The position numbers and the translations under genes are program-made. DNA of 61,942 bases, counting the filler, from Sluysia triapertura (taxonomy: Eukaryota), in assembly GCA_046118255.1 (NCBI GenBank). It is 5 parts of 5 records of this genome, joined end to end, with 100 filler letters (N's around TTAATTAATTAA, not from the genome) between each part and the next. Parts side by side here need not be neighbours in the genome. Positions count along the whole stretch, not along the records: positions 24,382 to 35,202 come from JBJNIA010193028.1; 4 more parts are not named here. One strand, written 5' to 3'. Below the pieces are notes generated by a model. That model did not search any database and had not been told where the DNA came from. It saw only the letters and a program-made list of their open reading frames with translations. Shown in pieces: positions 30,136 through 33,048 of the stretch. Numbering within the stretch: the stretch's first letter is position 1; every line of letters starts with the position of its first letter.

Positions 30136-30286
30136 CATATATTCAATTTCTTGTGGATCTTCCAATACTTCTTCTTCGTGTCCTTCAATAAATCGGATAT
30201 AATCTGCGTAAAATACAAACGGGCCAACCATAAGTCCATGAAAATTAAACATGTAACTTAAAAATTCTAGAACAGAAATCGGTCGT
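30136..30286 (-). CDS. Internal exon of an MBOAT1/2-type lysophospholipid acyltransferase
   Basis: ttttattacag|A + RPISVLEFLSYMFNFHGLMVGPFVFYADYIRFIEGHEEEVLEDPQEIEYM |gttagt; matches MBOAT1/2 PS.LEYLSY..NF.G...GP...Y.DY..FIEG; no stops. Confidence 0.9.
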
Positions 30287-30984
30287 CTGTAATAAAATAA
30301 TATTCATTTATCAAAAGCAAATGAAGGGATATTTTGAAAATATTCAACAAGAATATTAAAATATAGAGATTACTTTGATGGTTTTCTTGTATCAACGATT
30401 AAAATAATGATATTCTTATAATTTGTTTAAAATAAAATATAAATTAAATTAAATTAAATGTTATTTTTTGTCACAATATACTGTATCATTATTTGTAGCA
30501 CTGACGATAAAATATGTCAAAATTATCTTAATAATCTTAAAATAAAATAAATCTAAAATATCTTAGTAATTTTCAAAGTACAACCCAATAGTTCCTTCAC
30601 AGTGTAAGTAGCACATGTTATTCTCAATCAAATGTGATCTTTGGTGTGTGAGAAGTATTAAAAAGTCTACAAAATAGAATATATTATAATATAACATGCC
30701 ATAATGTAATAAAGATAAACATAAGTAAATTGCAGTAGCAACTTGACTATAAAGCTAAGACTATGAAATCTATTATTACTGAATTAATTTAACAAACATT
30801 TTGAAAACTAATATTACTACGACAATTTAACGAATATTATTTGAGTTAATTTAGTAAATAGAAATTTTAAATGATTTGATAACTATTAATTACAAGTTTA
30901 GTGAATTTAAATTTAGTGAATTTGAATTGAAAATAAAATTTACAGAATTAAAAATTTATATTCAATTACGTGCGGATTCTTTAA

Positions 30985-31623
30985 CCCTTGAACTACGGGT
31001 ACATATTTAATAGACAAGCCGCTTATATGCAAAAAAGCAAAAAACAAAAATTATTTATTTTGTTTTACAACAATATTTTAGCAATAAAATTTAAAAACAC
31101 ATTCTTCTTTCATTTAGAACGAAATACAATATTATCATTCTGTAAGTTGATCTTGCAATTTGAAGCTGCTTGTATGTCATTTTTTTCAATTTTTATGTAC
31201 AATAAACATTTCGCTTATCAAATTTAAATTTTCAATTGGAGTTTTGCGCAAAATGTTTCACTTTAACTTTAGAAATTGTACAGTAAAACTAAACGAACTC
31301 CAAAAATGTAATATTTTTTCTAACTTGATTATTTTTCGTACGGAAGACAAATTCGAATTATGTAGATAAATATTTGCATAACTCATATTTTTGCCTCTAA
31401 AATATAAGTTGACTTCTTCAAATTTGAAAATTTCTCAATACTTATTTTAGGTATAACATGGAAATAATTCTTTATAATTAGACCACATAGTAATAAATTA
31501 TGTGAGTTTCTATGTCTTGTGCGTCTGAATGAAATCAGATAATCATATTCCGGACAAATTCATCATATCGTACCTCACAAAATTTCGCTGATTCGTCTAT
31601 TGACGACAGCCGCAGTTAAAGTG
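30985..31623. mobile_element. Non-autonomous piggyBac-like element with degenerate TIRs
   Basis: TTAA-CCCTTGAACTACGG ... CCGCAGTTAAAGTG-TTAG (14/18 inverted match including the TSD). Confidence 0.55.
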
Positions 31624-32949
31624 TTAGGATTGCTCTTTTCTTCTATAATCACTTTTCTCGTATTAAGTTGGTTTTCTGATTTAAAAATTTAAATACTAAA
31701 ATTTTCATTTCTAATGTCAGAGACAAGTTAACACTTAAACTTCCGCATATTTATTTTGATGTAATCATCAGGCAACATTTTCACAAATAAATCAGTGTAA
31801 ATTTATGACGAATTCTCTTTGTAAAGATTTAGGCATAATATAGGTATCACGTTACAAAGTGCAAAAATGCATGGCCGGCGGTTTAGCGTCAATACAATCA
31901 TGCAATAATGCGTTATAGGTGTTAATAATTAACACTGATGATTTAGAGACTTATTATAAACCGATTCTAAACGTTCATAATATTGCAATTAATAGAAGTA
32001 ACAATAAAAAATAAAATAGTCATTCAAAGTACTAAATAAGTTAATTTTGGCGCATTCCAATCTTTCCGACATCATCGAAATAGCGAACTTGAAGTTTAAG
32101 TTTTGCTTAATATTTTTCCAGTCAACCTGATCAATTTCCCATGAATCAACGATGAATAAACATCCATTAAAAAACAAAAGAATTCGGAAAAAACTTGAAT
32201 TCTCTATAAATAATAAGCGGAACTTTGAAACCAGTGAAAATACAAAATCGGAGGAAAACATTTTATATATCCAAAATATTAAATAAATACATTAAAACAT
32301 ACTTTTTCGAGAAACTGCATTATTTTATCACAAATGTTAATAAAAGCCTAACTATTATTATAAAATAAGTGCAAATTATAATTTAATTTTTAATTTAATT
32401 ATAATTTTTAATTTATTTATTTATTAAAATTTTCATAGCTCTCCTTATTTAATTGTAAACTATTAAAAGTAGACGTGAACTACATAAAATCAATAACCAT
32501 TTAAAAACATAACATCCCTACATCAAGATCTTAATACTGTTGGTCGATTTTATTGCTTTCGGAATAAATTCGACAACCTCCTCTTTTAATCCATTACCGT
32601 GAAAATCTGTCGATTTCTACATGATCCATTTGAACGAACGAGATGATATGATAGAGCAATGTAGGAACTGCAGTTAGAGTGTGGCACAATTTTACAATGA
32701 AATTCTTTACTATTTCTTTAAATATTAGAAATTAAAGATTTAAAGATTCTGTTATAATGATAAATAATATAATAATATAAGATATATAAAACCGTTAGCT
32801 TCTTTGTAAAGATAATAAAAGTAATATTTTGCTAAAATTATTTTAGCTATTTTTTAAAACAAAGAAAATCTTTTTAGAAACTTCCTGTAAATTGTAATTG
32901 CGTTTATTCTTATATTTTCAAATATTAATTAGATAATAAATAATTTCAG

Positions 32950-33048
32950 GTGAATATTATCAGAATTCAAATTTTTTCCTTCGCTACATTTTACTGACAC
33001 TTGTAATGTTCTTTTTCCGGCAGAAGTATTATTTGGCATGGACAACGT
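32950..33048 (+). CDS. Internal exon of an MBOAT1/2-type lysophospholipid acyltransferase (R.KYY.AW motif)
   Basis: taatttcag|GT + EYYQNSNFFLRYILLTLVMFFFRQKYYLAWTT + T|gtaagt; 99 nt, phase 1-1; matches MBOAT1/2 RPKYYFAWTL. Confidence 0.8.

What the first reader, a model, noticed from the sequence alone, without database searches (positions are those of the whole stretch)
30136..33048. Two different intact exons of the same MBOAT acyltransferase lie on opposite strands within one contig
Seen: exon 30136-30286 (minus; FHGLMVGP..YADY..FIEG) and exon 32950-33048 (plus; RQKYYLAWT) both have clean AG/GT sites and no stops, in a window where almost everything else is decayed. They point away from each other, 2.7 kb apart, and I found no other MBOAT exon between them. 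Known: in MBOAT1/2 the GP..Y.DY block precedes the R.KYY.AW block in one polypeptide, so no single cis-spliced transcript can join them as arranged. Inference, with the mundane options more likely a priori: (a) contig misassembly or a recent inversion/inverted duplication, (b) two paralogues interleaved antisense in each other's long introns, or (c) trans-splicing between opposite-strand transcripts (precedent: Drosophila mod(mdg4)) or a scrambled gene.
Basis: partly seen in the sequence, partly recalled or inferred. Interest (0 to 1): 0.8.

Follow-up and report, generated by a model that had tools for sequence, protein, structure and literature searches.

The report
Two acyltransferase exons facing opposite ways
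Two real, intact exons of one flatworm-type lysophospholipid acyltransferase (MBOAT) gene do sit on opposite strands 2.7 kb apart, but the layout fits a flipped DNA block (assembly orientation error or real inversion) much better than an exotic trans-splicing gene.

Summary
Minus-strand exon 30136-30286 (151 nt) and plus-strand exon 32950-33048 (99 nt) are the only significant MBOAT matches in the 10.8-kb piece. Both have clean AG/GT sites. Both match the same flatworm LPLAT (MBOAT1/2-like) orthogroup. Their lengths and intron phases are identical to the corresponding exons of the Schistosoma japonicum and Paragonimus westermani orthologues, where all exons lie collinear on one strand with 1.6-17 kb introns.

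They cannot be spliced directly. The phases clash, and the two small exons that separate them in trematodes (about 33 nt and 91 nt) are absent from the piece. So are every upstream and downstream exon.

Because no exon for residues 1-155 lies between the two exons, an eri-6/7-like layout needing one trans-splice is excluded. An inverted internal block would need two trans-splices. No long direct or inverted repeat is present apart from (ATT)n microsatellites.

Best reading: a block carrying the 151-nt exon is flipped. This is most likely an orientation error in a fragmented, very AT-rich draft assembly. Otherwise it is a recent real inversion or a partial inverted duplication. Trans-splicing is about 3% likely. 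Reads or RNA were not available, so this is not resolved. Interest is low to moderate.

The parts
30136..30286 (-). Exon A of an LPLAT (MBOAT1/2-like) gene. It is 151 nt and encodes the ...GLMVGPF.FYADY..FIEG... block plus an acidic tail. Acceptor AG at 30288-30287; donor GT at 30135-30134.
   Evidence: Same length (151 nt) and same phases as the orthologous exon in S. japonicum (L003) and Paragonimus (L004).
32950..33048 (+). Exon C of the same LPLAT orthogroup. It is 99 nt and encodes ...FFFRQKYYLAWT. Acceptor AG at 32948-32949; donor GTAAGT at 33049-33054.
   Evidence: Same length (99 nt), same phase-1 start (the exon begins with GT, as in Paragonimus) and same phase-1 end as in L003 and L004.
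30287..32949 (.). A 2663-bp AT-rich spacer between the two diverging exons. It holds no detectable MBOAT exon on either strand. It contains AT-rich, partly palindromic low-complexity stretches (30428-30577 and 32373-32433) that are possible strand-switch points.
   Evidence: no exon. (only short AT-rich self-matches; a 35-nt 86% self-complementary stretch at 32373-32407). The reading as a junction is inference only.
24382..30135 (.). 5.75 kb downstream of exon A on the minus strand. It is intron-like, with decayed mariner remnants and an (ATT)n array. The expected next exons (about 33 nt and 91 nt) are not found.
33049..35202 (.). 2.15 kb downstream of exon C on the plus strand. It is intron-like and has no AGFGF or WHG exon. 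The piece ends inside an (AAT)n microsatellite.

Best explanation
The two exons are genuine, orthologous exons of one long-intron LPLAT (MBOAT1/2-like lysophospholipid acyltransferase) gene. The organism looks like a flatworm or close relative.

In the true gene the order is: exon A (151 nt), two small exons (about 33 and 91 nt), then exon C (99 nt), all on one strand, as in trematodes. In this contig the block that carries exon A has been flipped relative to exon C. Its missing small exons probably lie beyond the left end.

I think the flip is most likely an orientation error made while assembling or gap-closing a fragmented, 25%-GC, low-complexity draft genome. On that reading it has no biological function.

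Shown: the exons are real, orthologous, on opposite strands and not directly spliceable, and the rest of the gene is absent from the piece. Inferred: the cause of the flip.
For: 1. Exon identity and significance.

2. Both exons belong to the same orthogroup. They have exactly the exon sizes and phases of the S. japonicum and Paragonimus genes (151 nt and 99 nt). Those genes are collinear on one strand and span 25 kb and 53 kb.

3. The motif residues encoded by GC-rich codons (G, P, A, R, W) are all intact in a 25%-GC background. So neither exon is an old relic.

4. No DNA-level duplicate of either exon and no long inverted repeat is present. This argues against an old inverted duplication.

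5. The piece carries no N and ends in an (AAT)n microsatellite. That is typical of a short contig from a repeat-limited draft assembly. AT-rich near-palindromic stretches lie in the spacer.

6. A functional reading would need two trans-splices or two fully interleaved genes (argument built).
Against: No reads, mate pairs or second assembly could be examined, so the error is not demonstrated. There is no N gap and no long exact inverted repeat at any candidate junction. Contig-level inversions without such repeats are uncommon in de Bruijn assemblies. A real inversion would look the same in this sequence.
Confidence: 0.45

Rival explanations
1. A real genomic rearrangement. Either a recent inversion of the internal block carrying exon A and the two small exons, or a partial inverted duplication of that block into the intron before exon C. 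This would leave either a broken allele or haplotig, or a spare pseudo-exon beside an intact cis gene. No special RNA mechanism is involved.
For: The contig is continuous, with no N. The introns are full of decayed mariner remnants in both orientations, which is the kind of material that drives rearrangements. In C. elegans eri-6/7, a transposon-induced inversion of gene exons is polymorphic in nature (PMC11414722). Intact exons fit a recent event.
Against: No repeat pair marks the breakpoints. If this is the only copy, an inversion would destroy a conserved housekeeping lipid-remodelling enzyme. No second copy of any exon is visible in the piece.
Confidence: 0.32
2. Two recently duplicated LPLAT genes are interleaved antisense. 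Exon A belongs to a minus-strand gene and exon C to a plus-strand gene, and each sits in a long intron of the other.
For: Orthologues have introns of up to 17 kb, so a 10.8-kb piece could show only one exon of each gene. Flatworms carry two or three LPLAT paralogues.
Against: Both exons match the same orthogroup better than the other flatworm LPLAT group: exon A 46-57 against 33-45 bits for 18 of the 19 orthogroup proteins, and exon C 32-40 against 17-29 bits. A simple head-to-head duplicate would place six further exons inside the 2.66-kb spacer, and none is there. Interleaving needs several extra events.
Confidence: 0.1
3. The arrangement is real and functional. Transcripts from opposite strands are trans-spliced, as in C. 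elegans eri-6/7 or Drosophila mod(mdg4), to make one LPLAT mRNA.
For: Both exons are intact, with strong splice sites and conserved residues. There is precedent for opposite-strand trans-splicing after an inversion (PMC11414722). Titles returned by a literature search point to mod(mdg4).
Against: A and C are not consecutive exons, and their phases clash. The exons for residues 1-155 are not between A and C. So the layout is not the eri-6/7 head-to-head split, and an inverted internal block would need two trans-splices. No direct repeat longer than about 65 nt of AT-rich sequence links the region left of exon A with the region before exon C, compared with about 930 bp in eri-6/7. Such genes are extremely rare.
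Confidence: 0.03

Closest known systems
Lysophospholipid acyltransferase 2 (MBOAT1/2-like) genes of Schistosoma japonicum (P0141, locus L003) and Paragonimus westermani (P0139, locus L004)
   Same: The protein blocks are the same. The exon sizes are identical (151 nt and 99 nt) and so are the intron phases. The acidic tail after FIEG is shared. Introns are multi-kb.
   Different: In the trematodes all exons are collinear on one strand, and two small exons (about 33 and 91 nt) lie between the two. Here the two exons are on opposite strands and the small exons are not in the piece.
C. elegans eri-6/7 (an inverted 5' gene half rescued by trans-splicing; PMC11414722)
   Same: Parts of one ancestral gene lie on opposite strands and point away from each other. 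Transposon remnants are nearby.
   Different: eri-6 carries all the 5' exons, lies directly head-to-head with eri-7, and is flanked by ~930-bp direct repeats that let the pre-mRNAs pair. Here the 5' exons are absent from the spacer, the two exons are not consecutive, and no such repeat exists.
Drosophila mod(mdg4) trans-splicing locus (from my own knowledge; one search returned only titles and abstract starts)
   Same: Exons of one protein are encoded on both strands.
   Different: mod(mdg4) joins common 5' exons to an array of alternative terminal 3' exons that have their own promoters. Exon C here is a single internal constitutive exon of a multi-pass membrane enzyme, and no array is present.

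Membership tests
MBOAT superfamily (Pfam PF03062) | Sequence match to the MBOAT profile | tested here: met
   Exon A: E 4.5e-5 and 23.3 bits over profile positions 79-116. This is below the 27-bit whole-protein cut-off only because it is a 50-residue fragment. Custom LPLAT profiles give E 5e-20 for A and E 3e-6 to 2e-8 for C.
MBOAT superfamily (Pfam PF03062) | Catalytic His (WHG motif) and the conserved Asn/Asp of the active site | not testable with these tools
   The exons that carry these residues are not in the piece. The only WH-containing stretch (29104-29228, minus strand) is not significant: 24.3 bits against a shuffle maximum of 22.2 +/- 2.1.
Flatworm LPLAT2 / MBOAT1/2-like orthogroup | Closer to this group than to the other flatworm LPLAT paralogue group | tested here: met
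   Exon A scores 46-57 bits against 33-45 bits for 18 of the 19 orthogroup proteins. Exon C scores 32-40 bits against 17-29 bits.
Flatworm LPLAT2 / MBOAT1/2-like orthogroup | Shared intron positions and phases | tested here: met
   The exons are 151 nt and 99 nt with identical phases in the window, in L003 and in L004.
eri-6/7-type split gene rescued by trans-splicing | A complete 5' half of the gene lying head-to-head next to the 3' half | tested here: not met
   No exon for residues 1-155 lies between exon A and exon C, or anywhere else in the piece. That includes the highly conserved TGPLM..TQK..SLAF block.
eri-6/7-type split gene rescued by trans-splicing | A long direct repeat that lets the two pre-mRNAs base-pair | tested here: not met
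   Only AT-rich matches of 65 nt or less at 75-100% identity were found. The true donor exon is outside the piece, so the test is partial.
eri-6/7-type split gene rescued by trans-splicing | A chimeric mRNA joining exons from opposite strands | not testable with these tools
   No transcript or protein of this organism was found.
mod(mdg4)-type trans-splicing locus | An array of alternative terminal 3' exons on both strands, joined to common 5' exons | tested here: not met
   Only one copy of each exon is present. Exon C is internal, with a donor site and a phase-1 end.

The most novel reading that the evidence does not exclude
The divergent arrangement is real and the gene still works. Either an inverted internal exon block of a housekeeping LPLAT gene is rescued by trans-splicing between opposite-strand pre-mRNAs, or two young paralogues are interleaved antisense in each other's introns. 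The first would be an eri-6/7-like case in a flatworm-like animal, and would need two trans-splices.
Probability: 0.04. Interest if true: 0.8.

Novelty: already known. Interest (0 to 1): 0.27.

Why it matters
If the orientation is an assembly error, the finding has practical value only. It flags a local misorientation inside a gene, and it shows that gene models of this locus will be broken.

If the inversion is real, it would be a natural structural variant that disrupts or duplicates part of a conserved membrane-lipid remodelling enzyme.

Only in the unlikely event that one mRNA carries both exons would it matter broadly. It would then be a new animal example of opposite-strand trans-splicing repairing an inverted gene.

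Tried and rejected
1. Missing intermediate exons. I scored all 82 AG...GT open intervals of 60-210 nt and length 3n+1, on both strands, with two profiles. I also ran a motif scan for the 33-nt exon. Nothing convincing was found. A 91-nt interval at 33230-33320 (+) shares only a QLLC tetrapeptide with one cestode protein and is polar, so I rejected it.

2. A possible decayed WHG exon at 29104-29228 (minus strand). It would need an internal stop and a frameshift. It scored 24.3 bits against a shuffle maximum of 22.2 +/- 2.1 (about p 0.1), and it lies just past a weak mariner HTH hit at 28032-28151. I treated it as chance.

3. Long inverted or direct repeats that could mark breakpoints or allow RNA pairing. 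None was found apart from (ATT)n.

4. Independent copies of the locus or a transcript.
   - A word search with the exon-A open frame found nothing.
   - A word search with an alignment of a cestode protein and the two exons, entered as separate rows, found flatworm orthologues but no near-identical protein.
   - An exact look-up of 10 ORFs from the region found none in the collection.
   - An exact 40-mer search in genome contigs and metagenome contigs gave 0 matches.
   - A protein-guided scan of metagenome contigs found no relative.

5. Contigs of partial relatives were too short (2.9 kb) or not on record. One look-up was never sent.

6. Rfam and tRNA scans found nothing. The ESM Atlas found nothing for the 100-residue spacer ORF. 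Pfam found nothing for the other spacer ORFs.

8. One search was a wasted promoter scan of 11 bases.

9. I did not build or search a joined (spliced) A+C model. Each exon was searched separately, by reference.

Full report
**What is in the sequence**

The piece (24382-35202) has 25% G+C, no N, and (ATT)n/(AAT)n microsatellites at 25.55-25.67, 34.33-34.53 and 35.13-35.20 kb. It ends inside the last of these.

On the minus strand, an AG at 30288-30287 is followed by a 151-nt open stretch (30286-30136) and a GTTAGT donor. This stretch encodes the ...GLMVGPF.FYADY..FIEG... block plus an acidic tail.

On the plus strand, an AG at 32948-32949 is followed by a 99-nt open stretch (32950-33048) and a GTAAGT donor. 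This stretch encodes ...FFFRQKYYLAWT.

The exons diverge, with 2663 bp between them.

**Are the exons more than chance?**

- Pfam recognises exon A as MBOAT (E 4.5e-5). PDB gives only a weak MBOAT7 match and nothing for exon C alone.
- An exhaustive search with exon A alone returned 132 proteins. These included full-length "lysophospholipid acyltransferase 2-like" proteins of an oyster, a hemichordate, a nemertean and a tapeworm.
- Those proteins were chosen without reference to exon C. In TBLASTN against the piece, they place exon A at about residues 165-206 and exon C at about residues 255-287.
- A profile of 13 full-length proteins, run against all 736 six-frame open segments, gives E 5.4e-20 (A) and 3e-6 (C). 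The next best is 0.63.
- A flatworm-only profile gives 2.3e-17 and 1.8e-8. The next best is 1.1.
- A frameshift-tolerant profile-to-DNA alignment gives 75.4 and 48.5 bits. The maximum over 60 shuffles is 22.2 +/- 2.1 bits.

Both exons are real, and they are the only detectable MBOAT exons in the piece.

**What gene, and what should lie between them?**

I ran a word search with an alignment that held a cestode protein and the two exons as separate rows. The search returned the flatworm LPLAT family.

Exon C is closest to trematode and cestode proteins. The acidic tail after FIEG in exon A has the flatworm pattern. Both exons score higher against the same flatworm orthogroup than against the second flatworm LPLAT group. 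The contig therefore looks like a flatworm or a near relative. It is not human-like.

The S. japonicum and Paragonimus westermani genes span 25 and 53 kb. Their exons are collinear on one strand. The structure in both is:

- the A-type exon is 151 nt (1 base plus 50 codons, ending in phase 0);
- then comes an exon of about 33 nt;
- then a 91-nt exon (30 codons plus 1 base);
- then the C-type exon, which is 99 nt (2 bases, 32 codons, 1 base). In Paragonimus it even begins with GT GAA, as it does here.

The window exons have exactly these sizes and phases. So A and C are orthologous exons of one gene type, but they are not neighbours in the mRNA. About 41 codons in two small exons are missing, and A (phase 0) cannot be joined to C (which needs one base) in frame.

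**What is not there**

None of the following is detectable on either strand:

- the two small intermediate exons;
- the exons for residues 1-155, with the very conserved TGPLM..TQK..SLAF block;
- the AGFGF and WHG exons.

The trematode introns here are 1.6-17 kb. Their absence from a 10.8-kb piece is therefore expected for flanking exons.

One hint was a WH-containing stretch at 29104-29228 on the minus strand, which needs a stop and a frameshift. It is not significant. Just upstream of it, at 28032-28151, is a weak Mos1 HTH hit on the plus strand. A second mariner-like remnant lies on the minus strand at 25399-25695. I treat the hint as chance.

**Repeats**

Self-comparison finds no inverted or direct repeat beyond the microsatellites and short AT-rich matches. 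Nothing marks an invertible segment. [quoted passage not shown]

The spacer does contain AT-rich, partly palindromic low-complexity stretches at 30428-30577 and 32373-32433. A strand switch during assembly is conceivable there. This is inference only.

**What the layout allows**

Start from the collinear ancestral order seen in trematodes. One inversion can give A(-) to the left of C(+) only if the inverted block ends in the intron just before C.

- If that block held the whole 5' half of the gene, the exons for residues 1-155 would now lie between A and C. They do not. The eri-6/7-like layout (one trans-splice) is excluded for this contig.
- If only an internal block (A plus the two small exons) is inverted, a working mRNA would need two trans-splices.
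- If only A were inverted, the small exons should sit on the plus strand in the spacer. They were not found.
- Two complete head-to-head duplicates would put six further exons in the spacer. None is there.
- Interleaved paralogues remain possible, but they need several extra events and are not favoured.

Both exons keep every conserved G, P, A, R and W in a 25%-GC background. Neither is an old relic. Whatever flipped the block is either recent or not biological.

**Independent evidence sought**

I tried to find another assembly, read-derived contig or transcript of this organism and failed. The decisive data, reads across the spacer or an mRNA, are therefore missing.

**Verdict**

The exons are ordinary, orthologous LPLAT exons.

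| Reading | Probability |
|---|---|
| Block carrying exon A misoriented in a fragmented AT-rich draft assembly | about 0.45 |
| Real recent inversion or inverted partial duplication, with no RNA-level rescue | about 0.32 |
| Interleaved young paralogues | about 0.10 |
| Trans-splicing | about 0.03 |

Nothing in the sequence calls for a new mechanism. The known precedents, eri-6/7 (PMC11414722) and mod(mdg4) (my own knowledge; one search returned only titles), each fail on a defining feature that I could test here.

Noticed in passing
window 25399-25695 (-) and 28032-28151 (+): Two decayed mariner-type transposase remnants in opposite orientations, in the sequence downstream of exon A. The first gives a Transposase_1 (DDE) hit at E 0.005 and a SETMAR-like WW..G.IHY motif. 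The second gives a Mos1 HTH_48 hit at E 0.0065. Both are below the Pfam cut-offs and are interrupted by stops.
   Followed up: partly
window 25550-25670, 34330-34525, 35126-35202: Long (ATT)n/(AAT)n microsatellites form inverted-repeat pairs that bracket both exons together. The piece ends inside the last array, which suggests a contig that broke at a repeat.
   Followed up: partly
window 29104-29228 (-): A stretch that weakly resembles the MBOAT WN...WHG exon, about 0.9 kb downstream of exon A on the same strand. It has a stop where the conserved Trp codon would be, and a 1-base frame shift after WH. It scored 24.3 bits, within the range of shuffled sequence (22.2 +/- 2.1), so it is probably chance.
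   Followed up: yes
L003 (S. japonicum) and L004 (Paragonimus westermani): The flatworm LPLAT2 orthologues encode about 450 residues but span 25 kb and 53 kb. The first ~155 residues lie in closely spaced exons, and the later exons are separated by introns of up to about 17 kb. The exon sizes in the A-to-C region are strictly conserved (151, ~33, 91 and 99 nt).
   Followed up: partly
window 32373-32433: An AT-rich tandem array (25-nt unit, 2.5 copies) that is 86% self-complementary over 35 nt, about 520 bp upstream of exon C. It is the most obvious low-complexity spot in the spacer where an assembler could switch strands.
   Followed up: no
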